46,455 bases of DNA from Octopus bimaculoides (Eukaryota): NCBI RefSeq assembly GCF_001194135.2, contig NC_068982.1:134534191-134580645 (forward strand), read 5' to 3'. The translations under genes and the position numbers were made by a program. The notes below the pieces were generated by a model, which had not been told where the DNA came from, did not search any database, and saw only the letters and a program-made list of their open reading frames with translations. Position 1 is the stretch's first letter; the number at the start of each line of letters is the position of its first letter. This document shows positions 11,671 to 44,700 of the stretch, piece after piece.

Positions 11671-11742
<72 letters not shown>

Positions 11743-20700: not shown

Positions 20701-23700
20701 AAACAAATCTTCGAGTGGATTTGGTTGGGGGGAAACTGAAAGAAGCCTGTAGTGTGTATGTACGTATGTATATGTGTGTACATGTTTGTATTTGTGGCTA
20801 CACATCATGTGATGATTGTAAATGTGTGTCATCATCATACAAGTGAGGTTGTTTGTTTCCAGTCTTCTGTGATAAAACATGTCTGGTCATAAGGAAATAT
20901 TACCTTGCTTGGAAACAGGGGAAGGTTTGTGACAGGAAGGGCATCCAGCCATAGAAAAATCTTCCTCCACAAATTCCATTTGACCAATGCAAGCACCAGA
21001 AAGTGGATGATAAATGATGATGATAATGAATTCTATTTTGTATTTGTTTTATAAGTAGGAGCCTTCTTTTCCTGCTGTCTTGAGTATTGCAGGAGACTGT
21101 TGATTGAAATTAATTTTAGCAACATCGTTCACCACAGATTAATCTGTTCATCGGTGAGAATTTTTCCAGAGCATATTGCTTTTTCTTTATTTGAAGATAA
21201 TGTAATTCACACACATACACATCCTTATGCAGGCATTGTGTGTGTGCGCGTGCATGTACAAAAATATGTGTGTGTGTGTGCATAGATATGAGGTCGATGC
21301 CAGTGGCTCTTGACTTGTTCCTGTGCCAGTGGCACGTAAAAAGCACCCACTACACTCTCGGAGTCGTTGGCGTTAGGAAGGGCATCCAGCTGTAGAAACA
21401 TTGCCAGATCAGATTGAAACCAGGTCCAGCCTACTGGCTTGCTAGTCATCAGTTAAACCATCCAACCCATACCACTGTGGAAAGCAGATGTTAAATGATG
21501 ATGATGATGATGATGACGACGATGACGAGATATATAAAATCATCATCTAATGTCTACTTTTCCATGCTTGCATGTGTCGGATAGAATTTGTTGAAGCAGA
21601 TTTTCTTTAGCCAGATGCCCTTGCTGTTGCCAACCTTCACCCATTTCCAAGCAAAACAATATTCCCCATGATCAGACATGTTTTACATGGTAGACTGGAA
21701 ATGAACAACCTCACTTGTGAATCAGAAGTGGCTTGAGCTATATAAACAAAACTGAACACACCTACACAAGGTGTGTGTTGTTAGTTTAGGTGTAAAAGGT
21801 GTCAGGTGAAATTCTCTTATACCTAAAATGCAACTGGCTCATGAACAAATAACACACACACACACACACACATTGTGTTTATGAGCTCACCTGTATGACA
21901 ATGAAACTGATTTACAACCATCACATGATACCTAGAAAAGGGTCCACACAATCAAGTGTGTGTGTGTGTATAAATGTAGTTCTTACATTTATATGTAATT
22001 TCTGCGACTCCACTGTTTTCTTTCTTTCTCTCTATCCCTCTATATTTTCCGTTTCTCCCCCCACCCTTCTTTGCTGTCTTCTTTCTCTCACTCCCTACTA
22101 TCTTTCATTCCTTCTCCTCACTCCCTTTGTTTCTTTCCTTCATCCTCTCTCTTGTCCCCTTCCCCTCTGCCTGTTGCTCACATATGACTACATGCCATTT
22201 CTCTTGCCCCTGTCTTTTTTGGACAAGATGTCCACCGGACTGGATATTATTTCTCTTGCCTCCTGACATTTTTTCTCTCTTCTATTTATTCTATTTCCTT
22301 TAAAAATTTCTCCCAGGCGTTACCCATTACAATTTGTCTTGGCCTAACAGCCCTTAATGTTTGTCTTCGTCAACTGTTTACTTTGTACATCCATTCTGTT
22401 GTTGTTTGTTCATTTGAAGCCCTAACTCTCCACAAATTTTATATTTTTAAAATTTCTGGATGCTACTGTCTTATGAAGTTTTCCTACCTTGTCGTTAAAA
22501 ACATGAAATAAGGAGTAGTATATATATATATATCTGGCACGTAAAAAGACATTCGAGCGAGATCATTGCCAGTGCCGATGGACTGGCTCCTGTGCAGGTG
22601 GCACGTAAAATACACCATTTCGAGCGTGGCCGTCGCCAGTACCGCCTGATTGGCCCTCGTGCTGGTGGCACGTAAAACACCCACTACACTCTCGGAGTGG
22701 TTGGCATTAGGAAGGGCATCCAGCTATAGAAACTCTGCCAAATCAGATTGGAGCCTGGTGCAGCTATCTGGTTTGCCAGTTCTCAGTCAAATCGTCCAAC
22801 CCATGCTAGCATGGAAAGCGGACGTTAAACAACGATGATGATGATGATATATATAGTAGATTTATAAACCAGGCTAATTTAGCTACTTCTTTGTAGACTG
22901 AAAAAAAAAAATGATTAGCCTTAATTGATTCTCATCAGAGGAGGCGTCAACATCAATTTGACTAATCCCAGAGAAAAGCTGCCAATTTGCTTCTATACTC
23001 AACAATTTCAATAGCTACAAATTTTTTGCATACCATTAGTATTAACACTTTATCTAATATCAGGATCCTGACAATAGGGATCTCGGTCCACACCGTATAA
23101 AGGTATGATATAATACATGTAACCTTTATAGTAAGTCTATAAACAGGGCTAGCATGTATGCGTGTGTCTTTTTGTGTTTGTATTCAATCATTGCTGGATA
23201 ACTGGTGTTGGTTTGTTTATGTCTCTGTGACTTAGCAGTTTGGCAAAAGAGACCAACAGAACAAGTGCCACACTTAACAATTGGTACTAGGGTCAATTTT
23301 TTTGACTAAACCCTTCAAGGCAGAGCCCCAGTATTGCCACAGTCCAATGACTGAAACAAGTAAAAGATTAAAGATAACAAATAGTAGTTTGGATTGCTAG
23401 AAATAGCAGCCATATCACAAGCTTTGATCTAAAAAAATAGGACATTTTGGTTAATGTAGTCTTAGCTCACACTGTCTAACAAAAAAATGTGATAGAATCA
23501 GCTGGAAGTCATTTGATGATAGCTCTGCTTAATCAGGGATAAGTTTGGGGGTCAAACAACATCTATAAACCCAAATGTGTTACAGTACAGATGCCATGAG
23601 TATTCATCTTTACTCCTCATTTGAAAGCAATGAGATCTTTATAAACCCAGATCAAACATAAATATTGGTTTCGAATTTTGGCACAAGGCCAGCAATGTTG

Positions 23701-26700
23701 GAGTAGGAGGTACGTTGATTACATCAACCCCCAGTACTCAAATGGAACCCAAAATGATAAAAGGCAAAGTTGACCTTAGTGAATTTGAACTCAGAACGTA
23801 GTGACAGACAAAATGCCACTAAGCATTTTGCCCAGCATGCTAATGATTCTGCCAACTTGCCGCCTTAGAATCATACAGAAATATTCTTTTCTACTATAGG
23901 CACAAGGTACTTAATTTATAGACTCCGAAAGGATGAAAGGCAAAGTCAACCTCGGCGGAATTTGAACTCAGAACATAAAGACAGAGGAAATAACGCAAAG
24001 CATTTCGCCCAGCGTGCTAACGTTTCTGCCAGCTCGCTACCTTGGACCAAACATAAATATTAGCAGAGGTTTTGGTTTTCTCGTGAGCCCATCTTAATTA
24101 TCTTTTATTTCAGTCATTAGACTGTGCCTATTCTGGGGCACTGCCACGAAGAATTCTTTGTCAAATGAATCGACCCCAGTACTTATTCCCCCGATCCCTT
24201 TTGCAAAGTTATGGGGACTTAAAACACAGCAATACTGGTTGCCAAGCAATGGTGGCACACATACACACATGATGGGCTTCTTTCAGTTTCCGTCTACCAA
24301 ATCCACTCACAAGGTTTTGGTTGGCCCGAGGCTATAATGAGAGACACTTGCCCAAGCTGTCATGCAGTGGGACTGAACCCAGAACCACGTAGTTGGGAAG
24401 CAGGCTTCTTACCACACAGCCATGCCTGCGCCTATGGTATAGATATACATGAAGATGAAATTATGATTAAGGTAAAATTACAAACAAATGATTAAATATT
24501 AAGTAAATTAAACAAAAAAAATTAAATGCTTATAACATTAATGCACAATATGCATGTGTGTGTGTGTGCGTGTACATGCATACACATATATAAATACGCT
24601 CAAACCATACTAGCATGGAATGCAGAAATAAAATGATGATGATGTGTGTGTGTATTGTCGGAGAAGAAAACATAAAAAGCTATCAGGAATGACGACAACA
24701 AGAAGAACAAACAGTTTCAAGCTAAACAAATCTAATCTCAGTCAAAGATAAGATGTTCCTCATTTTTTTAAAATTAATTGGAATATCAGCTCCTGATATG
24801 GTTAACGACCTATGCAGTATAACAGTAACAGAACTAAGTTCCAATTTGCTTAACAGTAAGTTTCATTTAATAAGCTTGCAGGGTGCCAAAGCTTGGAGGT
24901 GAGTCTGGTGGCCAGTGCCGAGATACAGCACAGGCTTCAGTGTTTTCCCTTCTTCAAATGTCAATTTGTAAGAAAAGCAAAAACAACAAATTTTGCCTCA
25001 AGAAGGATGGGCAAAAAGAGAGAGAGAGAGAGAGAGATAGAAAGAGAGTGATGAGTGATGGTGGTAAGAGGTTGTATGGTTAAAGATGTGTTTTCTTTAC
25101 AGAATTATCAAAACTTCTGCTAAGGTTAATGAAGAAATGATTGCTTTCTAATCAGGAGTTAAGATAAATGAGTAAAATATATGCATATATAAATAAAACA
25201 TGAGAAATCTTAGAGTTACTCTGCAGCACAAATGTCACATATCAACCTTCAGCCCTCAGTGAAGTTGTAAAGTTTTGATCAGCCAAATACAAGAGGTATA
25301 GTTGATGTATGGTAAAGGTTGCTATATTACTGACCATATGGTCGTGAGTTCAAATACTGTTATAGCCAATGTTGTGTATATTGATTGCTGGTAGGAACAT
25401 TGTATTTCATTTTGCCATCATGAAATCAATACAATCACTTTTAACTTATCTCTATAAATTCTCAATAGAATTTAGTGCCAAAAGTAGGATACTTTTAAAT
25501 ACTTTAATATGTTTGGTAGTATATTAAGGTTGTTTAGGAAGGGCATCCAGCTGTAGAAACTCTGCCAAATCAGATTGGAGCCTGGTGTAGCCATCTGGTT
25601 CGCCAGTCCTCAGTCAAATTGTCCAACCCATGCCAGCATGGAAAGCGGACGTTAAACAATGATGATGATGATCCCTATGAGTAATTAATATGTATGGTGG
25701 CATGGGTTGGACAGTTTGACTGGGCTGGCACAGCCTACTGGCTTGCCAGTCCCCAGTCAAACCATCCAACACATGTCAGCATAGACAACGGACGTTAGAT
25801 GATGATGATGATGATGGTGATGATAATGATATGCTGTTTTAGAAGACCCGTCAAGCCAAGTGAAATCGTAGTCGTGGCTTATGCTGGTGGTATGGAAAAA
25901 AAGCACCTTTTGAGCGTTGGGCCTCACAGAGACAAAGTGGCCAAGACTTTTGGCATTATGCTGTGATTGAGAAGAAGACCCATCAAGCCAAGTTAAAAAA
26001 CCATCCTCCTCCTCTTTCAAAAAAATAAATGTGTGTGGAGAGAATCAGGCCTGTTTTTGATGATCCTCATTGGTGAGTCTAGTTTGTGACACTTTGTTAA
26101 GTTTTGTGATGCAAGGTGTATGTCAGAAGATTTTTCTCAATTTACACCCAATAGTTCAGTACAGCAATATGTAAATATTTATAAGCAATCACACCATGTG
26201 ACATCTTGGCCCAGTGTAGTTTCTATAGTCTTGGATTGACCAATAATCTGTGACTGAAATCGGGTAGATGAAAACTGTAAAGAAGCCCATTATATAAATT
26301 ATGCCAGTATTTTAAAAAGAACAGGCTCATCATGTGTTGTATAACATGGATTTCACTTGAGAATTATATTAAGGTTACAAATGTCGGCGGAATGACCAAC
26401 TTCTTAAATGTTCATTCAAAGAATATTTTGGTCGGCCAAACATCTGAATCCTCATCATGAAAACTGACAAACGTCCATCCAATCATTTGATTTTTAAGTT
26501 GAAAATGATGTTAGGATCAATGCTATTTGTCATTCTTCTAAGATTGGTGAAACACGTTTTGGTCATGACCTTGACAACTTGCAAACAATCACCAACACAG
26601 ACCCTCTACACACTACGGGTTAATGTGATGAATCAATATTGACAGCAGCTGTACAACAACAACAACAACACAAAATATTAAAATGCAGCAGGATTATTAA

Positions 26701-29700: not shown

Positions 29701-32700
29701 GACCCCGAANNNNNNNNNNNNNNNNNNNNNNNNNNNNNNNNNNNNNNNNNNNNNNNNNNNNNNNNNNNNNNNNNNNNNNNNNNNNNNNNNNNNNNNNNNN
29801 NNNNNNNNNNNNNNNNNNNNNNNNNNNNNNNNNNNNNNNNNNNNNNNNNNNNNNNNNNNNNNNNNNNNNNNNNNNNNNNNNNNNNNNNNNNNNNNNNNNN
29901 NNNNNNNNNNNNNNNNNNNNNNNNNNNNNNNNNNNNNNNNNNNNNNNNNNNNNNNNNNNNNNNNNNNNNNNNNNNNNNNNNNNNNNNNNNNNNNNNNNNN
30001 NNNNNNNNNNNNNNNNNGCGGTGGCGGTGGAGACGGTGGTGGTGGTACAAACAATGTTGTTTATTTGCAACCTTCAATGAAAACCTTCCTGGCTATTGTG
30101 CTGTTCATGTTTGAAGGACTGAGAAATATTACCTTGACTGGAAACAGGTGAGAGAGCACCTGGCCATAGAAAATCTGCCTTGACAAATTTCATCTGACCA
30201 TCTATGCAAGCATGGAAAAAAAAAACATGAAAACACTGATGATGACAATGTTTATGATGATTATTAGAAGGAGGTTGAAGACCACGGGAATTCAGGATTG
30301 TTTGAGGAAACTTTTATAGGCTAGTAGCTTGGTTACCATTATAGAAAGAGTTCTAAATCTGGGGAAATGGTCTGTAGTCCAAGTATTAACATTGCAAAGG
30401 TCAACATGCTAATTTAGATCAGAAGTCCTAGTGCCATTGAGGAAGTGGTTTTGTTCAGTATGTAGGAAGGAAGGTGGAACTTGACTCTATCTATTCACAA
30501 CTAAACAACGAATAAACAAATAAGATTTCTGGCAAACTGACAGAAAAGTAAGAGTTTAGATATATCAGAGGAGTAGCTAGCATTATAATCACTGTTGAAA
30601 TGAAATCTCAGACAGCTGTCTCATTAGATGTAGCTGTTAAGTTTTTTGTTGATGTTGACAGTAAATGCTTTCCCTGTGAGGGAAAAGTTGTTCTGTATGA
30701 AGCATAAGTAAAACTTGTGACATGGAGCCATGAACTTTAAATAAAGAAAATCTATGAAGGATGGAGAGAAATGAGTCAAGCGTGATTCAGTGGATGCTAA
30801 CTTGTATGAGAAGCTGACAGATCATCATCGTCGTTGTTTAATGTCTGCTTTCCATGCTGGCATGGGTTGGACGGTTTGACTGAGGACTAGTAAACCAGAA
30901 GGCTGTACCAGGCTGTTTCTACAGCTGGATGCCCTTCCTAATACCAACCACGCTGAGAGTGTAGTGGGTGCTTTTTACATGTCACTGGCATGAGGGCCAG
31001 CAGGCGGTACTTGCATTGACCTTGCTTGAATGGTGCTTTTCATGTACCACCATCATGGGAGCCAGTCAAGTGGCACTGGCAGCAACCACGCTTGGATGGT
31101 GCTTTTTACATGCCACTGGCATGGAACCAATCAGGCAGCACTGGCATCGACCACACTTGAATGGTGTTTTGTACCTGACACTGGCACAGGTGCTAGTCAG
31201 GCTGTACTGGCATCAGCCACAACAATGACTTCACTTGACTCAACAGGTCTTCGCAAGCACAGTTTATTGCCCAATGATTGAAGGGTTCTCTTAAATGGGC
31301 CAGTTATGCTCCACTGGCATAGGCCACAGTTACGGTTTCATTTGGCTTGTGGGGTTTTCTCAAGCACAACATATCTCCAAAGTCTCAGTCACTTGTCATC
31401 GCCTCCTTGAGGCCCAACGTTCGAAGGTCATGCTGGAGCCTGGTGCAGCCTCTCAGCTTACCAGCCATGGTCAAACTGTCCCAACCCATGCCAGCATGGA
31501 GAATGGATTCTAAATGATGACGATGATGATGTAATTTTCATAGTAGAATTGACAAGAAATTCAGAAATTTGAACCTTTAACCACTCAGTTCTCTCCTCAG
31601 TTACACAGTCTATAATTGTATTCTATTGCCAGGCCATCATTTTGCTTTTAAATGTAGAGCTCTTCCATCAGTCAATGTTGACCATGCACATGAATGTATA
31701 GGCTTGAGCAAGACTTTCCAGAACAACTAGTCATTGTTCATGCATGCAAGTCTCTTCTTTCAATATCATTAAAGTTTATCCAAGAGAAAAGTTCAATGAC
31801 TTGGACTGGCACAGCTTGACACCAATCTTATCCCAGACATAGCTGTTGGAATACAAAGATCCAGAATAGATACCAAATTCCTGATTTTCTAACAGTTCCA
31901 TTGCCTTGGATTGGTAGTTTTTCCTTTTTCTTCTTTCCAACTTCAAAAGAAGGGAAAAACAAAGCTGATTTCAGTGGGATTTAAACTCAGAGTGAAAAGG
32001 TTCATATCAAATATGACGTATTCTATTCAACACTAACAGTTCTGCCAAATTTTCCACCTTTGTTTATAAATACAGATGATCAATGTAAGCATAAAGATAA
32101 AACATGTTTCATCGAGTCAAAGAAGTGAGGGAAAACATTTGTAGAACTATTCATGATTACTTCCATTGTGAGAAAAAAATGGGGGAAACCCCCCCAAATC
32201 AAATGAAGTTTAAAAGAAGGAACTTTTGATTGAACTGAGGTTTTAAAACCCCAGATTTGAGTAGCTGGTAAATCCTAAAAGGTAACAAATCTATGTAAAA
32301 ATAAGACTACTTTCAAAAAATTGCTTTATAGAGTTTTCCGTACACATTTCACATAAGCATTAAGGAAAATTAATTTAGGGATGAAATAAGCTTATTTTTA
32401 AAATTCTTTTGCTATCAAACAACCTGAGACTGTCCCTAGTTCTATGATACAAACCCTGTGTTTAAAAGTGATCTAAATGAAAACCAGCCATCAAAATTTC
32501 AGGCTCCTTTATGTTTCAAACACCTTAACTCTGGCAGTTATTCTACTAAATTCTTTATTATTTTGAAAATTAACTGAAATGACAGCAGTTTATTTCAACA
32601 TAACTATAGTAACAAAAGGATTAATCTTGTCAGAGAAGTTATATATAAAATTGAAGAGGGCAAAATCAAAGTTTACTCAGAAGCAGAGAGAGATTTACAA

Positions 32701-33017: not shown

Positions 33018-35757
33018 TAAATTGCGAAATTAAACATCCACACCCACATATGTGTAAACGATGACAAATTCTAAACGAGATGAAAAAACAATCTATTAAA
33101 CATACAAGAGGAGTTGACAGATGGAAGAAGCAAATTCATTTGATGAACTCACCCCCAGTTCTGACGTTTGGCATCTTTTCTGGTGTGATTCATAGAGAAG
33201 TTGGTGTTGTTGAAGTGAAACTCTAACAGCTGGTGGAAATCTTCAACTTGCAAATAGGATAACATTTTTTCAACAAACATGCTTTCTTGGCAGATATGTT
33301 GAACCTGTTAAGGCTGGTTAGAACAACTTAGGATTCAAAAACAACATGCATTACAAATGTATATACATTTTAATGACAAATAAACAAATTTCATGAATAC
33401 ATAGTGAGTGAGAATTTCAGTGAAGAATATTTTATTCGTAACTTAAGTAAACATGTGGAAATAATGGAATAGCAGAATAGGGAAGTTGATCAAGAACTGA
33501 AAAATTGTTATAACCAGTCTAGTGGTGGTCAGTTTGTGGGGCTGCTAGAGAATTGGATAAAATACATTACAATATTTGTTGTGCTCTGAAATCAAATCCT
33601 GTTATAGTCAATTGTGCTTTTTATCATTTCAGAGTTGATTCAGAAAGTACCAGCTCAGTTCTGGCACAACCATTTCTCCAGCCAGCCATCGCATCTTGGA
33701 CGTTGTGCTAGTTCAAGAGTGTGAGGGCTGTGAAAGGCGTTACATCTGTTATCATTATCATTTAACATCCGATTTCCATGCTGGCAAGCTGGAGAACTAT
33801 GCCAAGCTCTATTGTCTGTTTTGGCATGGTTTCTATGGCTGGATGCCCTTCCTAGTGCCAACTGCTTTACAAAGTGTACTGGGTGCATTTTTTGTGACAC
33901 TAGTACTAGTAGGGGTCACCAAGTACCTTGTGAGACAGAACAAAGTCCCTTTGAAAGCATGGTATGCGCTATACCAAGCCATCCTTGATTCCAAGTGATG
34001 GCTGTAGTGTTTGTTAGCTTAGCTTACACAATCCATGCATGGCAAAATATACCAGTCCATCTCAGATAACATTCTTCTATGATCTGATATCTCTACTAGA
34101 GCTTGGCAAACAGAAATCCGTAGAACTAAATGTTTACTATCCAAATACACAATAAAATACCTGTAGTGTGTCTGAACTCAAAACCCTTTCTACTAGCTTG
34201 TGATACTGCTTCAAATGAAACTGTTATGGTGTGAAGCACAGCCAGTGAAATCTCATCACAACACTGCTATTTCATGATACTCTATCTATCCAGTAAAATA
34301 TTTTTGCTTGCATCTTATTTGTTTATCTATTGACATCTGTATTGTTTATGCTCGCATAGGTTAGGCATATTACTTAGGCACTCACTGTTTTACAGTCAGA
34401 CGTCCATCCACTTGATAATCCCAAACTGGTTTTCAAAGGATTTTTCATTCTATTTGTCTTTGAAAGTGCAGAGCTACAGGATCATTTTGTTATGGAATGT
34501 AAACAAACATCACTGTTTTTAACTTTTGTGTGGAGCAAGAAATGTAGCATTCACATACATACGAGTTTGATTACATTTGTGTGTCTGCAAAAATCACTCA
34601 GCTATGTGTGGTAACATTGCTGTCTTTTCCCCTATCAATGAGTCATCTGTTGGCTTTGCGTCTTCAAAGGCATGTAGAATAAGATATTCCTTACTAGAAA
34701 AACAGGTAGGGGTTAGTGACAGTAAGAGCATTCAGCTGTAAAACAATGCCTCAATAATATATTCATTTAACCCATGCTAGCACAGAAAAAAACAAACGTA
34801 AAAGCAAACAAAACAATATATACACACCAGGCTTCCATATAGTTTCCAGCTATAAATTCCACTCAAAGCATTGCTCATCCCAAGGCTACTGTAGAAGACC
34901 CTTTTCCAAGGAGGCATGCAATGAGATGGAACTCAAAAACCAAATGGTAACAAAATAAAGTGTCTATCTACACAGCCATACCTGGTGAGTTGGACAAAAA
35001 ACAGATTTGTCAGATTGACATGTTTGGCTGATTAAATCAATCCCAGTTTAATATTACTGACATCGGTTTTATTGATCACTGTTGACACAATGACATGATG
35101 AACTGAGTTGCTGAAAGTAGTCAGTTGTACCTGTACAAAGTAGTTCTTTAGAGCTAACGAGGTTAAATACCATTAACACCAAAATGTCTTTGTTGAGGAA
35201 TAATATACAGTACCAGTGACAAACTGTTTTATTGTCTATGGATTATTTTCAAAAGAAATTATTTTTTACCATTTAGTCAGAAGGGAATGAAGGATGAAAG
35301 TACGAGCAAACCAGATGTCTGGCCCAAATGCTTGCATTGAAGTGGATTCCACTATATATAAAAAAAAAACAAACTACAGGCCTAGGTAGTGGTGGTAAAC
35401 TTAGCAACAATTTAAGTCTACCATCCAAGTAGGCTTTGGTGGCCAATCGGATACTCTAAAGATTGCTTTAGTCCACTGATCTAGACTGGTATTTTGTCAC
35501 ACCTGACCAATATCATGAGTGAATTTGATAGACAGAACGTGTAGAAGCCTATTCTCTCTCTGGCAGTTGTGGTGATTTGCTGCACTTGAAAAGACGTACA
35601 TTATTTACATTATTTAAATTAGACAGATATGTGTCCTCATCTTGTTTGTTGTTACCACAACATTTCAACTGATTTTCTCTCCAGCCTTCATCAGGTGTCC
35701 TTGTGGAATTTTTAAACCCAACTCTGGGTTCTCATTCCTAAGATATATTTTTGCAGA

Positions 35758-35791
<34 letters not shown>

Positions 35792-38700
35792 TACTCAAGG
35801 GTTGGGTTCAAAATTCTATCAGGCCACCTGATGAAGGCTGGAGAGTAAATCAGCCGAAATATTGTGGTAACATCAAACAAAATGAGGACACATATCCGTC
35901 CAATTTAAATGATGTACAGAATTCCTCATCTCTGAAATATAGAACAGTTAAAAAGATGTGTCAAGCTAAGTAAAACCACTGTTCTCCATTCAGGTGCCGG
36001 TGCCACATAAAGTGCACCCATGCCGGAGCTGCATAAATGCATCCATTCTGGTGGCACATAAAAAGTACCCAGTACAGTCTGCAAAATGGTTGGCATCAGG
36101 AAGGGCATCCAGCCATAAAAACCATGTCACAACAGACAACTGGAGTCTGGCCAACTCCATTTTCAGACCAGAAATGCATAGCGGTATTTCGTATGTCTTT
36201 ACGTTCTGAGTTCAAATTCCGCTGAGGTTGACTTTGCCTTTCATCCTTTTGGGGGTCGATAAATTAAGTACCAGTTGCGTACTGGGGTCGATCTAATCGA
36301 CTGGCCCCCTCTCCCAAAACTTCAAGCCTTGTGATTAGAGTAGAAAAGAATACAGTGGAAATGAGGTACCAAGTCAACAATGACAATGTACTACATTACT
36401 AGATGACTGTATACAATTCAGCTGGCTTAGTTTAGATTGAATAAGTGATATCATATTTTCTTCATCCAACTGTAAAATACTTGCTTCAGTATCCTTCATC
36501 ATTTGTAAAAGTCGTCATCTGTGCCAGTGGAGCGCTAACAGCACCGTCCGAGCATGGTCATTGCCAGAGCAGCTGTCTGGCTTCCGTGCCAGTGGCATGT
36601 AAATAGCACCATTTGAGTGGGATCGTCACCAGTGTCGTCTTACTGGCACTTGTGCTGGTAGCTCGTGAAAAAACATTCAAGCGAGGTCGTTGTCAATGCC
36701 ACTGGACTGACTCTTGTGCAGGTGGCACGTAAAAAACACCATTTTGAGCGTGACCATTGCCAGTACCGCCTGACTGGCACGTAAAAGCACCCACTACACT
36801 CTCGGAGTGGTTGATGTTAAGAAGGGCATCCAGCTGTAGAAATTCTGCCAGATCAGATTGGACCCTGGTGCAGCCATCTGGTTTGCCAGTCCTCAGTCAA
36901 ATCGTCCAACCCATGCTAGCATGGAAAGCGGACGTTAAACGATGATGATGATGATGATACAATGCATGTTGGCAGAGGTGGATCAACAGTATCATTACAA
37001 CATTGGAGAAAAGGTCTTGTAATATTTGTTTTGTGTTCAAATCCTACCATGGTCAATGTTGCTCTTCATCTTTTTGAGGTTGATAAAATAAAGCATCAGT
37101 CAAGTATTGGAGTAGATTCAATCAACTAAAGCTATTACTGCCAATCTCTGGCCATTTGCTATGTTAGAAATTATAATTATTATTATTAAGGTGGCAAGCT
37201 GGTAGAATCGTTAGGTGAAATGCTTGGCGGTATTTCGCCTGTCACTACGTTCTGAGTTCAAATTCTGCTGGGGTCAACTTTGCCTTTCATCCTTTCAGGG
37301 TCGATTAAATAAGTACCAGTTATGCACTGGGGTTGATGTAATTGACTTAATCCTTTCCCCCAAATATGAGGCCTTGTGCATCCAATAGAAAGGATTATTA
37401 TTAAGGTAGTGAGCTGGCAGAGTTGTTAGCAAGCTGGGTGAAATGCTCAGCGGTTTATTCGTCTGTCGCTACATTCTGGGTTCAAATTCTGCCAATATTG
37501 ACTTTGCCTTTTGTCCTTAATAAATTAATAATTTAAATACCAGTGAAACATTGGATTTGATGTAATTGACTAGTCCCCTCCCCACAAATTTCAGGTTTTG
37601 TGCTTTTAGTAGAGAGGATTATTACCTCCACCTTAGCGAAGACAGAGGTATTGTTTTCAGCTGTGTTTATTTGTTTGTCCATGGACAAGATATCTCAAGA
37701 ACTGCTGGATGAATTCGGATGAAACTTTCAGGGATGTTTGGCCTCGTGACTGCCACAAACTGATTAGATTTTGGGATCGATCTGGTACTGGGCAAGGATT
37801 CAGGATTATTTTTCAGGCTTTTAAAAAATTTTTGAGAGCGGTCAGGTTCATTTTGAGTATTCCCGTTTGAGAGCAGTCGAGTTTATTGCATTGAGAGGAC
37901 GTTGGTGTTGCCTTGATGGAGGTTTGTGGTCTCTGAGCGCTCTTGTTATTATTTTCAGAGTCAATTTCGTCTATCATCCATTTAGTTAAAATACTAGTGC
38001 TTTAGTAGGGATCAACCTAATTGACTATACCTTCTTCCCCATTATTTCATACTTTTATATTAATTCCCTATAATCTGCAGAACTGATCACCTGCCATAGC
38101 TATACACATAAGCATTATCTCCACTATCATAATCACTTTTATATTCAATTCTACCCAACTCTAACCCAAAGTAACACAGTTATTTTTACTCGTCTTTGTA
38201 CTCAAATCAATTCCTCAGTGAATCAGATGCAAGTACGAAGATTCGAAGAAAGTAAATTAAGAAAACATATCAGCAGAGTTATTGCCCTTGAACACTGAGG
38301 TTTGTACTTTGCAATAAGAATCTTACGAAAACCTTTTATTCCTTGGTGGATACTTCGAAGTATTCCTCGCTTTAGCAGGTATATTTACTTCTGAGAAATA
38401 TAAATACTAAAGCTTTTTCTTCATATCTACGTTGGTTATTGACTGCATTATTTGTCATCAGGTCAGAACTTGGCAGGATTTGAAATCAGTAGATTTCAAA
38501 CAAACTGTAAAAGAAAGTATTTAATCTAATAACTGTGTACCATTTCTACTAAGTTACCAACCTATTATCGTCATCTAAATATTCATTATCCCAAAAGAAC
38601 ACATCAAAGCACTTTTAAAGTCTCATTTTTCTCAGGATCTTACATGCTATTCATCATCATATTACGTCCGCATGTATAGGAGAGGTTGTCACGGTCGGAG

Positions 38701-41700
38701 TTAGTTCTTATTCAGAGTTATTGCCCTTGCAAAATCAGTTCTCGCGTGTACGTTTCATTAGTTGAGGGATGTTTAATTATAGGCAATTAAAAGGGGATCA
38801 TGAGTTCAAATTCACAGCAACTCTGTACAGGGCACAACATTCTGTGTCCCACAGGTTGTCTGGCAGTTAAAAAATAGGACAGGTGCTATGAGAAAAGTTT
38901 CTTGCCGGAAACAGGTATCCATCCATGGGAAGATGTCTTTCATTTATTTAGTTACAACTAAATTGAGAGATCATGCAGGACATAGATATCCTTCAGCTAC
39001 ATCATCGTTTAACGCCCGCTTTCCATGCTGGCATGGGTTGGACGATATGACTGAGGACTGACGAACCAGGCTCCAATCTATCTGGCAGAGTTTCTACAGC
39101 TGGATGCCCTTCCTAATGCCAACCACTCCGAGAGTGTAGTGGGTACTTTTACGTGCCACCAGCACGAGGGCCAGTCAGGCGGTACTGGCAACGGCCACAC
39201 TCAAATAATGTTTTTTATGTGCCACCTGCACAGGAATCAGTCCAGTGGCACTGGCAACGACCTTGCTTGAATGTTTTGTTCACGTTCCACCGGCACAAGT
39301 GCCAGTAGGGCGACGCTGGTAATGATCACGCTCAAATGGTGCTATTTACGTGCAACCGGCACAGAAGCCAGACAGCTGCTCTGGCAGTGATCCCACTCGG
39401 ATGGTGCTGTTAGTGCTCCACTGGCACGGATGCCATTAAAGGATTATCAATTGTTTTTTAATGTTATATACAAGGCATGGGTATGTGGTTAAAAAGTTTG
39501 CTTCCCAACCACATAGTTTTGGGTTCAATTTCACTGCATAGCACCTTCAGCAAGTGTCTTTTACTATAGTTAACAAAAGTCGTGCATACGGAATTGGTAG
39601 ATGGAAACTGTGTAGAAGCCTATTATGCGTGATGTGAAGGGTATGCATGCTTGTGTCTCCTTGTCTTGATGTCACATGGTAGCTGTAAATGAGTGTCATT
39701 GTCACTGATTTCCAATATTCTGTAGAAACGTGTTTGGCTATGGAGAAATAATAACTTGCTGGGAAATAGGTGAGGATCGATGACAATAGGGGCATCAGGC
39801 CATAGAAAATCTGCCTCAATAAACTCCGTCTGATCCATGCAAGCATGGAAAAATGGCCGTTAAAATTATAAGGATGCTGTTACCATTAGGATAACATAAT
39901 GGAGAGGATGTAAAAATCCAGTCAGTCTTTTAGAGCCTGCTTTTTTAGTTATACTAAGAATTAAATTATTTCTGAGTCAATGTTTCACCCTTTTTGATGA
40001 CAATTTGAATTGGCCAGCATCCCTTCTTAAATCTTTCACGTTGATATAAAAAAGAAGATGAAATTTAATTTTGAATTCCCAGCACTTTTCAAATGAATTT
40101 CTATCATCCTTGGTTGGGAAACATTGCTCCAAGAGGTTGAGGGGCTATCTTTCGATTTGATGTGAAGAGACGTCAGGTAAAAGCACATGGGTTTTGTTTA
40201 CATCTAATCGGCTAACCCTAACAGGTCGATTAGATGTAAACAAAACCCCATGTGCTTTTACTGTGGACTAACCATCAGACAAGTGGTGTTGTTCACTTCA
40301 TAATCTTCTGTGGGAACATGTCCAGCCATGGCGAAAATTATCTTGTTTGGAAGTGGGTTTGGGACAGCAAAAAGGGCATCCGGCCATAGAAAATCTGCAT
40401 CAATGAATTCCATCTGACCCATACTAACATGGAAAAGGTGAACGTTAAAACAATGATGATGAGGAGAAGGAAGAGGATGATGATGATGATGATGATGAAC
40501 ATACACAAAGGAGGAACCATGAACAGAGCATGGGTCGTTTATGAAAAACATACATGTGAATAACAAGTTGATTTAAATATTCCAATATTAGCATCAAAAG
40601 GATATTACAAAGTGCTTTAATAACGAGGATTTGTTTTTGGCAGAAAGTTTTCATGGCTGTTGGGTGAGAGACTGGTGGAGAAGCCTTTAGACTTTTGTGC
40701 AAAACAGTTAGAAGAGATTCTACAGATTTTTCTTGGTCTTTAAGCCAACTGTTTTCATTCAATTCCTAAAGAAAAAAACAGGATAGAAACCGTTCAATAG
40801 TTGTCATGTAAGGAAAAGGAATGAATATTCTTTAACCAAAAAGGGATTCTAGCTTGTCTGTTGGCAGTCTCATGATGATATTGTTAACCCATAAAACGCT
40901 AGGATTTGCACTTACATAGCATGGACTGCTGAGCACATTTTATGAAAAAGAGACTACCAACGCACACATAAAAAACAAAAAATAGTTAAAATATCTTCTT
41001 AGTATATAATGGTGGCAAGTTTTACATCATCTGAAAAGTCATTAATTGAACTATTACTCCTCTTGCATTCTGGGGGTATTGAAGCGTTTGAGTGACATTA
41101 GACCCTAACAAATGCCCATAAATTAAATGCATCTATTTGGGCCACGATCGTGGCCTGNNNNNNNNNNNNNNNNNNNNNNNNNNNNAATACTTGTATTTCA
41201 TTCTGAGAGAGGTGGTGAAAGTACCACAATAATTCAGCCTACAACATTCTTTCTGTCATTGGTATTTTACTAATCACGATTCTTTTAATCCAACAGGTAA
41301 GAATTTGTAATCAATACTCAATGCTAATGAAATGTTTGTTAGTTACACAGTAATATAATTTTGAACAGATTTTTTTCTCTTATTTTCAAATACAATGTAA
41401 TATAATTTTTTTAAGAATCTGGAATTTTGACAGAGAAAATAAAAAGATTTATGGAAGTAAAAGATTTTAGTTATAAACAGTATGAAATAGGACACAAGAA
41501 AATGGTTTAGATTTGTAAAATAGATAAAAAGAAAATGACAAGCAATATTTTATGTAAAGATGGTATTGAGACATTTAGTAATGTTGTTTAAGCAGTAATG
41601 AAAAAGTTTGATGAACCTCAAAATGGAAATAATAATGATAGTCATGACAATGATGATGATGATTATGATGGTATGGGACAGTGAATTATTGAGTATGTCA

Positions 41701-44700
41701 ATATCAATGATGTTTAGTAGTAGCAGTAATCGAAATTTTCAAATACCTCCAAAATTTCAATACACAATTCCAGAGCTCTGCAAGAGGCTTCAATCTCGGA
41801 ATCAAGCGATGATGAAATCCAGCTAGTCATAGCTTCAAGATGGAAGGCTGTGACATTCTTTGGTGCTGTTGGGTCATTGTATTGGGAGAGATCAAATAGA
41901 TAATAGCTGAGCATTTTCCGAATACTTCTGACCGAACAGAATGAAATGAAGAGTTCAAACACCTGAAAAGTTGAAAGAAAATTATTTAATGAGATGCTTA
42001 AGAAAAGAAGGACAAACACCACAGAATGGCTGATATGTCTAACATGGACCACGTCTGTGACCAAAATACAGGATGGTAGACAGATATCATACTTGGATTG
42101 TATTTTTATAAAGCAGCTTTCTCAAATGTAATTTCTAAAAATGGTGCAGGAGTGGCTGTGTGGTAAGTAGCTTGCTTTCCAACCACATGGTTCCGGGTTC
42201 AGTCCCACTGCGTGGTACCTTGGGCAAGTGTCTTCTACTATAGCCTTGGGCCAACCAAAGCCTTGTGAGTGGATTTGGTAGACGGAAACTGAAAGAAGCC
42301 CTTCCTATATATGCATGTGTGGCTGTGTTTGTCCCGCCAACATCGCTTGACAACCGATGGTGGTGTGTTTACGTTCCCGTAACTTAGCGGTTTGGCAAAA
42401 GAGACTGATAGAATAAGTACCAGGCTTCCAAAGAATAAGTCCTGGGGTCGATTTGCTTGACTAAAAGGCGGTGCTCCAGCATGGCAGCAGTCAAATGACT
42501 GAAACAAGTAAAACAGAAAATGTTATTTACACATTACTTAGTATCAGCTCATAGCAGGATTGTGTGAAAATGCTCATGTGAAGGTTAGTGACACCTGTTG
42601 GCAGGGCTCAATTAGTGTTAGTTGAAGGTAACAAGATAAAAGAATTACTCAACAAGCTAAGAGCATACCTTTGTAGCAGTCAGTGCAGAGCAACTTCCTA
42701 AAAGTACAAAGACTTCCTTCAATGATGCAGAAAGGTGAGTAAACCTGATGTAAAAATAAAATAAAATAGATAACTAGAAAATAAATAGAATAAATTAGAC
42801 CATGGAAGAACCATTTAATAACACACAGACCTGTTAAATTCAATTTAGATTTCAATTTATTTCATAAGTTTTTAAATTCTATATATTTTTTCCCCTCACT
42901 CTTTTGCAACTTGGTCACTGACACTGTTCTACTGTAATGGAACAGTTGTCAGGTTCGCAGTTTTGCAATGAAAATTTTGGTAGTAATGAGTATTATTATT
43001 AAATGGCTAGAGTCACTCTTACATGATGTCGTTACGTCAGTTCCTACACGCAATCTCAGATCAAGTCTCTTGCTAGACAGGCGCAACTCTAAACATAGAA
43101 AATAAATAGAATTAAAGAATCTACATAATTTCATAGACCATTGTTACCTGGAAAAATATATCATCACTATCATCAATGTAATAATCATTCTTCCCAGCAG
43201 GAATAGTTGAGACAGGTTCACAAGTTAACAAACATATACATACTTCACTTCAATGTCATCTCATCTGCTAAGTCTATTTCAGGTTTGTCCTAATTCTTTC
43301 TTCTCTAGTCTATATTTGTCTGTTGCAAGTCAAACCTTTGTGCTGGATTTGGTCAGACATTTTAAAGTATTTCCATCAACACAATATGCCTTTTTTTTCA
43401 CTGATTACAATGAATAAAATAACTAAATGATTAAGAAAATATAGTGTCAGGTAGTTACTGGTAATAGTAGCAATTAGTTAGAGAGGCATGTACAAAGAAG
43501 AAAACTGATATCTGTTGAGATTTATGATAAAAAATATTCTTTTCATAAACAAACAAAAACGCTGTCATTACTACAAACACCAAAAGAATTTGAATGTTAC
43601 TGTTCTTGGTGTGATTGTAACAGCAATCAAAGTGTGGTAAGTTGGTGCTGGTGTTGCTATCATTCATTGTTTAGCTGCTGTCAGCTTGGGTCAGCAGCTG
43701 TGTGCATCTGTTCGCTGTCTATCTGCTGTTTCTCAATGCTCCCTGTCTAAGTAGCTAAGGTGTACTGAATTTATATTGATGGTTAGGCTCAGAAAGAAGT
43801 GTTCCAAAAGATTAAATGGTTACTAGAGCCAGTTCCACACAAAGTCCTCATTGGTCAGATCTTTTTCTATCATGTGAGTAATATTCTAGCAAGTTGCGAC
43901 ATCGGATATAGTGATCTGATTACTGAATATTCCCACTACAGGCACAACACCTTAGATTTATAAGACTGAGGGACTGTGATGTGGTTACATTCATTATGTT
44001 TCCAAAATTACAAACAGAACAAGTTAAATGAAATGGCTTTAAACAGGGGCACCAGTTTGATTGCGTGGTCCTTTAGTTCTCTTCACAATCAGGTAGTTCC
44101 AACCAAAAACGACATGGGTGGGAAGTGAACTGACAACAAAACAAACATTCAGTTACAGATCAACAATTCTACTTACACTGCAAGGAGCTGCTGTATTTTG
44201 GAATTCTTCATCATATCAATAAATAAATCAATGGCATAGAGACGACTGGTTCCTGATTCACCATTAATAACAATATTAAACATCATCTTGAACGTCTGGT
44301 TGATGTTGTTGGCATTGAACAGCTGACAACAAAATTGGGAGTAAATGAGAAACAAATATTTATTTGGTAAAATAAAGAATATGGAATAATCTAGAAACAG
44401 AATCTCTGATAATTCATTTTAGAAAATATAAACATGTGTAGATCAATCTCTTTTTCATTTGACTCTATGTAAGTGTGAATATATCCATATACAAAAGATA
44501 CACACAATACAAGACCTTTGCTTCCTCAAAGGTAACTGGTTTTGTATCACATCCACACTAGCACTCCTAACCCTTTCATCTCTTCCTCCTCCTCCTCTTG
44601 CCACCAATATTGTATCCCACCCCAATCTCAAAACCCAACATTGATCATTATACCTAGTCCTTCCACCTCAGAATATTGAAATTCTTATGCTGTATATATA

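What the first reader, a model, noticed from the sequence alone, without database searches (positions are those of the whole stretch)
35596..35917. Strand-asymmetric hammerhead ribozyme pair inside the minor intron of CIP2A
Seen: two ~125-bp inverted arms flank a (TTA)n spacer. The + strand arm folds as a complete minimal type I hammerhead: GCCAC-CTGATGA-A-GGCTG/CAGCC-GAAA-TA-TT-GTGGT, with a palindromic ATAT stem III. The copy read on the CIP2A transcript strand (35699-35654: GACAC-CTGATGA-A-GGCTG/CAGTT-GAAA-TG-TT-GTGGT) has a stem I mismatch, G.U in place of the G10.1-C11.1 pair and a broken palindrome. Established: Penelope-like element pseudo-LTRs carry minimal hammerheads with an extra base after A9 that cleave best as dimers, and inverted pLTRs are typical of these elements. 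Inference: decay biased to the sense copy could reflect selection against cleaving the host pre-mRNA. In the pre-mRNA the two arms would also pair into a long duplex that locks the motif and may be an ADAR substrate, all within a slowly spliced U12 intron.
Basis: partly seen in the sequence, partly recalled or inferred. Interest (0 to 1): 0.85.

Follow-up and report, generated by a model that had tools for sequence, protein, structure and literature searches.

The report
Decayed hammerhead-bearing retroposon pair in octopus intron
Two inverted copies of a short mobile element that carries a minimal hammerhead-ribozyme motif sit inside the rare "minor" intron of an octopus CIP2A gene, but comparison with Octopus vulgaris shows both copies are decaying neutrally, so this is an ordinary transposon relic and not a ribozyme shaped by the host gene.

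Summary
Arms 35596-35729 and 35793-35917 are about 86% complementary around a (TTA)10.7 spacer. The + strand arm holds a complete minimal type I hammerhead (35823-35868). The gene-strand arm holds a degraded one (35699-35654). The host gene is CIP2A on the minus strand of an Octopus species. The repeat lies in a 7,308-nt AT-AC U12-type intron (40605..33298).

The motif has the same architecture as the experimentally active Poseidon (Penelope-like) hammerhead of Anolis. It is the most conserved block of a dispersed retroposon family. That family also occurs as single, 5'-truncated, tandem and head-to-head inverted copies in other genomes.

The selection reading fails. The insertion is shared with O. 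vulgaris, where the gene-strand copy keeps an intact core. The "perfect" stem I (GCCAC) and the ATAT palindrome of the window's + copy are derived, lineage-specific changes. The ancestral states were GACAC and probably ACGT. Both motifs diverge at the background intron rate (89% against 88-90% identity).

The intact copy would be inactive. It has no same-strand partner, its helix III self-duplex is worth -0.2 kcal/mol, and it is locked in a hairpin of about -160 kcal/mol.

No link to a Penelope-like ORF in octopus could be shown. This is a new member of a known kind, of low interest.

The parts
35596..35759 (-). Longer copy of the hammerhead-bearing retroposon, sense to CIP2A. Its 3' end (…AAATAATGTAAATAATGTAC) is at 35596. 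The 5' part (CATCTGCAAAAATATATCTTAGGAATGAG…) reaches 35759.
   Evidence: The 5' extension is shared with the single-copy relative L009.
35654..35699 (-). Degraded minimal hammerhead on the gene strand: GACAC-CUGAUGA-A-GGCUGG/UCAGUU-GAAA-UGU-U-GUGGU.
   Evidence: Its MFE fold is not hammerhead-like.
35760..35791 (.). (TTA)10.7 microsatellite at the head-to-head junction. It is (AAT)n at the 5' end of the longer copy read in its own sense, and it is expanded relative to O. vulgaris.
   Evidence: AAT-rich sequence also precedes the unit in L005 and L009.
35793..35917 (+). Shorter, 5'-truncated copy, antisense to CIP2A, with its 3' end at 35917. It has lost one of the two terminal 9-mers (AAATAAYGT).
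35823..35868 (+). Complete minimal type I hammerhead motif: GCCAC-CUGAUGA-A-GGCUGG(8 nt)UCAGCC-GAAA-UAU-U|GUGGU. The predicted cleavage site is 35863/35864.
   Evidence: The isolated 58-mer folds into stems I and II at -15.9 kcal/mol, z = -2.3.
33298..40605 (-). U12-type AT-AC intron of CIP2A, 7,308 nt, phase 1, containing the repeat.
   Evidence: The 5' splice site ATATCCTT lies at 40605-40598. The splice is in frame (…IKALC-N-ICQESMFVEKML…). The site is conserved in O. vulgaris.
33307..33313 (-). Branch-point sequence CCTTAAC. The branch A lies 10 nt upstream of the terminal AC (33299-33298).
40606..40765 (-). CIP2A exon upstream of the minor intron (…MKTFCQKQILVIKALC).
   Evidence: tblastn with O. 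vulgaris P0001 gives 93% identity. That gene model reads through the AT-AC donor.
33153..33297 (-). CIP2A exon downstream of the minor intron (ICQESMFVEKMLSYLQVEDFHQLLEF…). The 3' end coordinate is approximate.
   Evidence: The third O. vulgaris gene model starts inside this exon.

Best explanation
The feature is the relic of one old insertion of a short, non-coding retroposon whose most conserved block is a Penelope-like-element-type minimal hammerhead.

Two copies were laid down head-to-head. Their 5' ends, one of them truncated, meet at an (AAT)n tract, and their 3' ends face outward. This is the arrangement expected when both strands of the target are nicked and used to prime reverse transcription, as shown in vitro for a PLE protein. 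That step is inferred here.

The insertion happened before this octopus and O. vulgaris diverged. Since then all four copies (two arms in two species) have drifted at the neutral intron rate. By chance the + strand copy of this species gained a better stem I (A>C), and a helix III that probably decayed at a CpG still reads as a palindrome (ACGU > AUAU). The gene-strand copy lost C11.1 and C11.2 to C>T changes.

Neither copy is expected to cleave. The motif needs a second same-strand copy to build helix III, and none is present. The AUAU helix III is essentially unstable. In any transcript the two arms pair into a roughly 125-bp duplex that excludes the ribozyme fold.

The only plausible present-day effect is that the CIP2A pre-mRNA carries a long intronic hairpin. 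This is a generic dsRNA and a possible ADAR substrate; that is inferred and not tested.
For: Orthologous presence:
- Both arms are present in O. vulgaris.
- Of the four copies, only the window + arm has GCCAC; the other three have GACAC. Only the window gene-strand arm has CAGTT; the other three have C(A/G)GCC.

Neutral rate:
- The two hammerheads are 82/92 = 89.1% identical between species.
- The arms without the hammerheads are 90.4% identical.
- 3.7 kb of the surrounding intron is 87.6% identical.
- No compensatory arm-to-arm changes are seen.

Family:
- A profile of the translated arm recovered 45 small spurious ORFs.
- Their loci show a single copy with a complete unit (L005-L008, one locus assembled in four runs) and single copies cut at the 5' side by the contig end or by truncation (L009, L011, L014).
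- L013 holds a tandem pair.
- L015 and L010 hold head-to-head inverted pairs in which a 5'-truncated copy abuts the 5' end of a longer one.
- Only the hammerhead module is shared with octopus, at 80-85% identity.
- L013a keeps GAAACGTT, which supports an ancestral ACGU helix III.

Architecture:
- The motif fits the same descriptor as the active Poseidon_Ac hammerhead: stem I 3 bp, CUGANGA, 1 extra nt, stem II 6 bp, GAAA-CGU-H.
- The literature describes 5' truncation, partial tandems and adjacent inverted 5'-truncated copies as PLE hallmarks, and describes dual min-HHRs on opposite strands 100-700 bp apart.
- The PAc protein nicks and extends both strands.

Inactivity:
- The helix III self-duplex is -0.2 kcal/mol for AAUAUU against -3.5 for AACGUU.
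- In the full + strand transcript (hairpin MFE -158.7 kcal/mol) the pair probabilities of stems I and II are 0. The gene-strand hairpin is -167 kcal/mol.
Against: - No PLE ORF (RT plus GIY-YIG) was found in the window, in the O. vulgaris locus or beside any family copy. The best 120 of 1,705 relatives of a PLE protein included no cephalopod. The mobilising partner is therefore unproven.
- The terminal tandem 9-mers, and a tRNA-like head in the related family, would also fit a LINE-mobilised SINE.
- Covariation in the 13-sequence alignment is not significant (33/500 shuffles reach the observed score).
- Rfam hammerhead models give no hit.
- My own family model aligns the Anolis hammerhead in the correct register but only at 11 bits, E = 0.3.
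- Only two species were compared, so some ancestral states remain ambiguous, for example TG against CG at positions 15.2-16.2.
- Cleavage and RNA editing were not measured.
Confidence: 0.8

Rival explanations
1. One reading: the host selects against a ribozyme that would cut CIP2A pre-mRNA, so the gene-strand copy was preferentially inactivated while the antisense copy stayed intact.
For: In this species the gene-strand copy has three motif-damaging changes and the antisense copy fits a strict descriptor. A 2026 preprint reports that tandem retrozymes are depleted from introns and exons in Xenopus.
Against: In O. vulgaris the same gene-strand copy keeps CUGAUGA, G10.1-C11.1 and GAAA. Lineage-specific changes within the 46-nt motif number 1-3 in each of the four copies, about what 6% per lineage predicts. 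The antisense copy's 'intactness' is partly a derived gain (A>C). Even the ancestral copy had only a 3-bp stem I and needed a partner, so there was little activity to select against.
Confidence: 0.05
2. The inverted repeat is kept because the intronic hairpin has a function: an ADAR editing or recruitment site, a small-RNA precursor, or a regulator of slow U12 splicing.
For: The hairpin is very stable (-167 kcal/mol, z = -19). It is retained in two species about 12% diverged. Generic plant miRNA-precursor models match it at E = 1e-16.
Against: The miRNA matches score far below the curated thresholds (81 against 230 bits) and occur on both strands, which is what any long hairpin gives. The arms diverge at the neutral rate with no compensatory changes, and arm-to-arm identity is about 83-84% in both species. 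A retained neutral insertion is the default expectation.
Confidence: 0.08
3. The element is a foldback or MITE-type DNA transposon, or a local palindromic duplication, and the hammerhead-like motif is coincidental.
For: The element is almost perfectly palindromic, short (322 bp) and non-coding. No target-site duplication or empty site could be defined.
Against: Relatives occur as single-orientation copies (L005-L008 with a complete unit) and copies that lack the 5' part (L009 at a contig end, L011 and L014 truncated), all keeping the 3' part. One related family has a tRNA-like head. These are retroposon features. The hammerhead block is the only part conserved between families, at 80-85%. It carries features not used in the search: the extra nt after A9, G10.1-C11.1 and an ACGU palindrome. 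The chance expectation is 0.01 per window.
Confidence: 0.04
4. The + strand copy is a working ribozyme that processes an antisense transcript of the locus.
For: The core is complete, stem I is 5 bp, stem II is 6 bp and helix III is palindromic. The isolated 58-mer adopts stems I and II as its MFE.
Against: PLE-type min-HHRs show no detectable activity as single motifs and only low activity as dimers. There is no second same-strand copy. The AUAU helix III is worth -0.2 kcal/mol. In context the fold is fully displaced by the arm-arm duplex. The motif is not conserved in O. vulgaris (stem I 3 bp, AUGU).
Confidence: 0.03

Closest known systems
Minimal type I hammerheads of Penelope-like elements (Cervera & De la Peña 2014), e.g. 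the Poseidon_Ac hammerhead of Anolis carolinensis (Frangieh et al. 2024)
   Same: The order is stem I / CUGANGA / one extra nt / stem II / GAAA / two-nucleotide palindromic helix III / H17. Stem I is short (3-5 bp), stem II is 6 bp with a 7-8 nt loop, G10.1-C11.1 is present, and helix III is (ancestrally) ACGU. Copies occur mostly as solitary or truncated units and as pairs on opposite strands.
   Different: No RT/GIY-YIG ORF is associated. There is no ORF start at stem II (ATG AAG GCT GGA GAG TAA). H17 is U and not C. Primary sequence similarity to the Anolis motif is negligible (11 bits). Activity is untested.
Hammerhead-bearing SINE-like elements and non-LTR retrozymes of animals (Schistosoma Sm-alpha; Cervera & De la Peña 2020; 2026 preprint linking retrozymes to PLE pLTRs)
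   Same: It is a short non-autonomous element carrying a type I hammerhead. A related family has a tRNA-like head, and one locus (L013) has tandem units 132 nt apart.
   Different: Retrozymes are defined by same-strand tandem repeats, with a ribozyme in each unit, that give circular RNAs. The CIP2A locus is an inverted pair and cannot yield a unit-length RNA by double cleavage. Canonical retrozyme hammerheads have loop-loop tertiary contacts, which were not examined here.
Inverted SINE pairs in introns as long dsRNA (e.g. inverted Alu pairs edited by ADAR in primates)
   Same: Two inverted retroposon copies about 60 nt apart in one intron give a duplex of about 125 bp in the pre-mRNA.
   Different: Editing at this locus is unverified. 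The organism is a cephalopod, where editing is extensive; this rests on established knowledge and was not tested here.

Membership tests
PLE-type minimal type I hammerhead (min-HHR) | Catalytic boxes CUGANGA … GAAA in type I order (stem I open), with H17 before the 3' strand of stem I | tested here: met
   All four copies (two arms in two species) and 9 family relatives have it. L013b, L009, L012 and L014 carry single core mutations.
PLE-type minimal type I hammerhead (min-HHR) | One unpaired nucleotide between A9 and G10.1 | tested here: met
   It is A in all 13 aligned copies (invariant column A16 of alignment A4). It is U in Poseidon_Ac. The feature is as listed.
PLE-type minimal type I hammerhead (min-HHR) | Conserved G10.1-C11.1 pair, a long helix II and a short helix I | tested here: met
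   G-C is present at pair 17-36 in 10/13 copies. Helix II is 6 bp and 93.6% paired. In helix I only 3 bp are conserved (CAC/GUG), 5 bp in the window + copy. The window gene-strand copy has G.U at this pair.
PLE-type minimal type I hammerhead (min-HHR) | Palindromic positions 15.2-16.2 (helix III formed only in a dimer) | tested here: inconclusive
   AUAU in the window + copy and ACGU in L013a are palindromic. The other copies have AUGU or ACAU, which is consistent with CpG decay of ACGU but is not proven. The AUAU duplex is worth -0.2 kcal/mol.
PLE-type minimal type I hammerhead (min-HHR) | Structure supported by covariation across the family | tested here: inconclusive
   Two pairs show changes on both sides. 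The covariation score is 0.179 against a shuffled mean of 0.147, and 33/500 shuffles are as high. Slid controls are much lower.
PLE-type minimal type I hammerhead (min-HHR) | Self-cleavage, at least as a dimer | not testable with these tools
   This needs in vitro transcription of monomer and dimer constructs.
Penelope-like element (pLTR of a coding PLE) | Motif lies in the pseudo-LTR flanking an RT plus GIY-YIG ORF | tested here: not met
   Only 63 nt lie between the arms. There is no RT/GIY-YIG ORF in the window or in L001, nor beside family copies. No cephalopod PLE appears among the best 120 hits to Poseidon_Ac. The positive control L016 shows the expected HHR-ORF-HHR layout.
Penelope-like element insertion signature | 5' truncation, partial tandems, and an inverted 5'-truncated copy abutting the 5' end | tested here: met
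   The window/O. vulgaris locus, L015 and L010 are head-to-head with one truncated copy. L011 and L014 are 5'-truncated. L013 is tandem. The signature is not exclusive to PLEs.
Rfam hammerhead families (Hammerhead_1, _3, HH9, HH10, II) | Covariance-model match | tested here: not met
   There is no hit at gathering threshold or at E<=10 in the window, L005, L009 or L010. Control: two exact copies of the validated Poseidon_Ac hammerhead in L016 are also missed, so the test is uninformative for this variant.
Non-LTR retrozyme | At least two same-strand tandem units, each with a type I hammerhead | tested here: not met
   The two copies are on opposite strands. No other copy exists in the window.
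U12-type (minor) AT-AC intron | 5' splice site /ATATCCTT, branch site TCCTTAAC-like 10-15 nt from the 3' end, terminal AC, splice in frame | tested here: met
   The donor reads A|ATATCCTTTT at 40605. The branch site CCTTAAC is at 33313-33307 with the branch A 10 nt from the AC at 33299-33298. The intron is phase 1 and in frame, and the sites are identical in O. vulgaris. The mouse Cip2a minor intron is also phase 1. Actual splicing by the minor spliceosome was not tested.
miRNA precursor families matched by Rfam (MIR7533, MIR7723, MIR2606, MIR4208) | Score at or above the curated gathering threshold | tested here: not met
   Scores are 81/230, 58/200, 55/140 and 49/140 bits. For MIR7533 both strands match almost equally (81.3 and 81.1 bits), and these are plant families. 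This is the generic long-hairpin effect.

The most novel reading that the evidence does not exclude
The roughly 70-nt hammerhead module may be the conserved 'central domain' of a so far undescribed superfamily of short retroposons. It would be shared, at 80-85% identity, by an octopus family and by a tRNA-headed SINE-like family in unrelated, unidentified eukaryotic assemblies. The family would integrate by a PLE-like two-strand priming mechanism that routinely produces head-to-head pairs. In cephalopods such pairs would seed long intronic dsRNAs, including one in the conserved minor intron of CIP2A, that feed the unusually active ADAR system.
Probability: 0.15. Interest if true: 0.45.

Novelty: new member of a known kind. 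Interest (0 to 1): 0.22.

Why it matters
The two-species comparison removes that reading.

What remains is a clean, dated example of a minimal-hammerhead retroposon inserted head-to-head in an intron. It yields two practical lessons. First, Rfam's hammerhead models do not detect PLE-type minimal hammerheads, even a validated one. Second, strand asymmetry between two old repeat copies should be polarised with an orthologue before selection is invoked.

The cross-genome conservation of the hammerhead module, and the recurrent inverted pairs, are modest leads for people who study Penelope-like elements and retrozymes.

Tried and rejected
- Rfam at gathering and at E<=10 gave no hammerhead hit, only sub-threshold plant miRNA hairpin models. 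The control on the Anolis Poseidon locus showed the test cannot see this variant.
- An exact or degenerate DNA pattern scan of JGI metagenome contigs gave three hits that match only the 24-nt pattern and lack the GAAA box, so they are chance. IMG/VR gave none.
- The TCCTTAAT at 32366-32359 was first considered as the U12 branch site and rejected, because the resulting exon runs into a stop. The real site is CCTTAAC at 33313-33307.
- A low-stringency tblastn with human CIP2A residues 396-560 could not place the divergent middle exons.
- A weak BLAST match of the arm at 30754-30775 is only TGAAGGxTGGAGAGAAA, without either catalytic box, and is not a copy.
- ARAGORN finds no tRNA in the SINE-like heads. 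The tRNA-like A and B boxes are my reading of the alignment only.
- The search for an octopus PLE using the Poseidon_Ac protein returned 1,705 hits. The best 120 were reptile, insect, spider, fish and unnamed metagenome or Logan contigs, with no cephalopod.
- My family covariance model R1 finds all family copies (57-81 bits) but aligns the Anolis hammerhead only at 11 bits, E = 0.3.
- The source organisms of ERZ21867824, GCA_052426985.1 and SRR118693xx could not be identified from the literature.
- Papers on SINE central domains were checked for a hammerhead link, and none is mentioned.
- A Pfam scan of all six-frame segments was prepared but was too long to submit. Only selected ORFs were scanned.

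Full report
**What is there.** The window carries an inverted repeat. Its arms (35600-35729 and 35793-35922) are 130 nt long, 83% complementary without gaps and 63 nt apart. BLAST gives 85.7% over 126 nt, E = 3e-37. The spacer holds (TTA)10.7 at 35760-35791. Compared with the O. vulgaris orthologue, the right arm of the window has lost 9 bp, one of two terminal 9-mers.

On the + strand, 35823-35868 reads GCCAC-CTGATGA-A-GGCTGG(8 nt)TCAGCC-GAAA-TAT-T|GTGGT. On the minus strand, 35699-35654 reads GACAC-CTGATGA-A-GGCTGG(8)TCAGTT-GAAA-TGT-T-GTGGT. A strict minimal-hammerhead descriptor hits only the + copy in 46 kb, against 0.01 hits expected from 300 dinucleotide shuffles. With stem I relaxed to 3 bp, the other arm and both O. 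vulgaris arms are also hit, against 0.047 expected.

**Host gene and intron.** A database search returns a CIP2A_N (PF21044) protein of Octopus vulgaris, whose exons are 91-100% identical to the window. The window therefore comes from an Octopus species close to, but not, O. vulgaris.

The exon ending at 40606 is followed on the minus strand by ATATCCTTTT. Downstream, CCTTAAC (33313-33307) lies 10 nt before an AC at 33299-33298. Joining the exons there keeps the frame (…IKALC-N-ICQESMFVEKML…), whereas the nearby AG does not. The sites are identical in O. vulgaris, whose annotation reads through the donor and splits the gene into three models. Mouse Cip2a is a documented minor-intron gene with a consensus donor and a phase 1 minor intron, the same phase as here. 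The repeat therefore lies inside a 7,308-nt U12-type AT-AC intron (40605..33298).

**What the motif belongs to.** Rfam gives no hammerhead hit at gathering threshold or at E<=10. The only matches are plant miRNA hairpin models far below threshold; MIR7533 matches both strands almost equally. This negative result is not informative. A genomic Poseidon element of Anolis (L016) carries two exact copies of its experimentally validated hammerhead flanking the ORF, and Rfam misses both.

Using the Poseidon_Ac sequence from the supplement of Frangieh et al. 2024, my descriptor parses the validated ribozyme as CCT-CTGAGGA-T-GCCTGC(7)GTGGGC-GAAA-CGT-C-AGG. This is the same architecture as the octopus motif: short stem I, one extra base after A9, a 6-bp stem II with a 7-8 nt loop, G10.1-C11.1, and a two-nucleotide palindromic helix III. 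These are the features that Cervera & De la Peña list as emerging beyond their search descriptor.

**Family.** No other copy exists in the window or in the O. vulgaris locus, and DNA pattern scans of metagenomes and viral contigs gave only chance hits. One reading frame through the arm is open in all four copies. A profile of those translations recovered 45 tiny spurious ORFs from Logan, ENA and NCBI assemblies. Their loci contain related elements:

- L005-L008 (one locus assembled in four runs) holds a single copy with a complete unit. The L009 copy starts in AAT repeats at the contig end.
- L011 and L014 hold 5'-truncated copies.
- L013 holds a tandem pair 132 nt apart.
- L015 and L010 hold head-to-head inverted pairs in which a 5'-truncated copy abuts the 5' end of a longer one.

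One family has a tRNA-like head by eye; ARAGORN is negative. Between that family and octopus, only the roughly 66-80-nt hammerhead module is shared, at 80-85% identity.

In a 13-sequence alignment, stem II is 93.6% paired. Pair 4 varies among U-A, U.G and C-G, and there is one C-G to G-C swap. Only 3 bp of stem I are conserved, and covariation is not significant (33/500 shuffles).

5' truncation, partial tandems and an adjacent inverted 5'-truncated copy are described as hallmarks of PLE insertions. Min-HHR pairs on opposite strands 100-700 bp apart were noted in Schistosoma. The Anolis PLE protein nicks and extends both target strands in vitro. That the octopus element was mobilised this way is an inference. 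No RT/GIY-YIG ORF is linked to it, and no cephalopod PLE surfaced among the best 120 of 1,705 hits to Poseidon_Ac.

**The asymmetry.** The O. vulgaris locus (L001) aligns to window 36170-32581 at 87.6% identity and contains both arms. The insertion therefore predates the species split. The four copies can be compared site by site:

- Stem I is GACAC in three copies and GCCAC only in the window + arm, so the 'perfect' stem I is a derived A>C change. GACAC-like (ACAC/GUGG) is also the state in the related families.
- The 3' strand of stem II is C(A/G)GCC in three copies and CAGTT only in the window gene-strand arm. These are two C>T changes, one of them at the C11.1-G12 CpG.
- Helix III is TA, TG, TG and CA in the four copies, and CG in relative L013a. 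This is most simply CpG decay of an ACGU palindrome, although a TG ancestor is slightly more parsimonious.
- In O. vulgaris the gene-strand copy keeps CUGAUGA, G10.1-C11.1 and GAAA. The antisense copy has CUGAAGA, with the change at the free position N7.

Lineage-specific changes within the 46-nt motif number 1, 3, 2 and 2, plus one ambiguous column. Between species the two motifs are 89.1% identical and the rest of the arms 90.4%; 3.7 kb of the surrounding intron is 87.6% identical. No substitution in one arm is compensated in the other. There is thus no sign of constraint on either motif, no consistent strand bias, and no constraint on the hairpin.

**Would it work?** The isolated + strand 58-mer folds into stems I and II (-15.9 kcal/mol, z = -2.3). 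The other three copies do not. PLE-type minimal hammerheads show no detectable cleavage as single motifs and only weak cleavage as dimers. Here there is no second same-strand copy. The AUAU helix III self-duplex is worth -0.2 kcal/mol, against -3.5 for ACGU. In the full + strand transcript (hairpin MFE -158.7 kcal/mol) the pairing probabilities of stems I and II are zero, because the two arms pair with each other. The gene-strand RNA forms a hairpin of -167 kcal/mol, z = -19. Such a duplex in a pre-mRNA is a plausible ADAR substrate in a cephalopod. This rests on general knowledge and was not tested.

**Verdict.** The biological inference, selection against sense-strand cleavage, is contradicted by the orthologue. 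The feature is a neutrally decaying, head-to-head insertion of a minimal-hammerhead retroposon. It is a new member of a known kind, with low interest.

Noticed in passing
window 40550-40765 (-) and L001 10001-17129, 26463-27129: The O. vulgaris annotation (GCA_951406725.2) splits CIP2A into three 'hypothetical' gene models. The middle one (P0001, 243 aa) reads through the AT-AC donor into the intron. The next one starts at an internal ATG just after the AC acceptor. The unrecognised U12 intron appears to break the gene prediction.
   Followed up: partly
L010 9890-10260, L012, L013, L015 (ENA ERZ21867824; NCBI GCA_052426985.1): A SINE-like family in unidentified eukaryotic assemblies has a tRNA-like head (TAGCATAACGG … GGTTCAATCC). 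It carries the same hammerhead module as the octopus element at 80-85% identity, while the rest of the element is unrelated. The module behaves like a conserved SINE 'central domain'.
   Followed up: partly
window 35716-35970 (+) and the equivalent frame of all four arms; P0002-P0046: One reading frame through the hammerhead and the 3' part of the element is free of stops in all copies examined (…TPDEGWRVNQPKCCGNNKQDED…). Gene callers therefore emit dozens of 53-86-aa pseudo-proteins from this repeat. There is no evidence that it is coding, but it proved a useful handle for finding copies.
   Followed up: partly
L001 11400-12911 (-): A 504-codon open segment with a reverse-transcriptase domain (RVT_1, E = 2e-37) is present in the O. 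vulgaris CIP2A locus. It lies in a ~1.6-kb stretch of L001 (about 11328-12919) that has no aligned counterpart in the window, between two adjacent orthologous blocks (window ~44131-44138). This is a lineage-specific retrotransposon insertion or deletion; its class was not determined.
   Followed up: partly
window, at least 25 places, e.g. 1262-1435, 5206-5396, 13795-13962, 22659-22851, 36783-36954, 39002-39165: A dispersed repeat of about 180-330 bp occurs more than 25 times in the window and many times in L001 at 70-85% identity; its translation often reads …LQLDALPNANHSESVVG…. One copy lies next to the inverted repeat, at about 35970-36206.
   Followed up: no
window 16399-16719 (+) and 18380-18598 (+): These are retrotransposon remnants inside CIP2A introns. 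One is a DUF7083 domain (E = 3e-16). The other segment (…FSKLDLSEAYLEVK…) resembles a retrotransposon reverse transcriptase by eye but had no Pfam hit. Between them, 17167-18214 is very AT-rich simple sequence (GC 0.215 for 16001-18000).
   Followed up: partly
window 35760-35791 vs L001 ~23940-23950: The (TTA)n tract at the junction of the two copies has 10.7 units in the window but only about 4 in O. vulgaris, a microsatellite expansion since the split.
   Followed up: no
window 35995-36062: There is a tandem repeat of a 25-nt unit (TGCCGGTGCCACATAAAGTGCACCCA), 2.7 copies at 74% match. It lies inside the neighbouring dispersed repeat.
   Followed up: no
L016 2995-3029 and 5633-5667: Rfam release 15 hammerhead models miss both exact copies of the experimentally validated Poseidon_Ac hammerhead even at E<=10. 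PLE-type minimal hammerheads are effectively invisible to Rfam-based annotation.
   Followed up: yes
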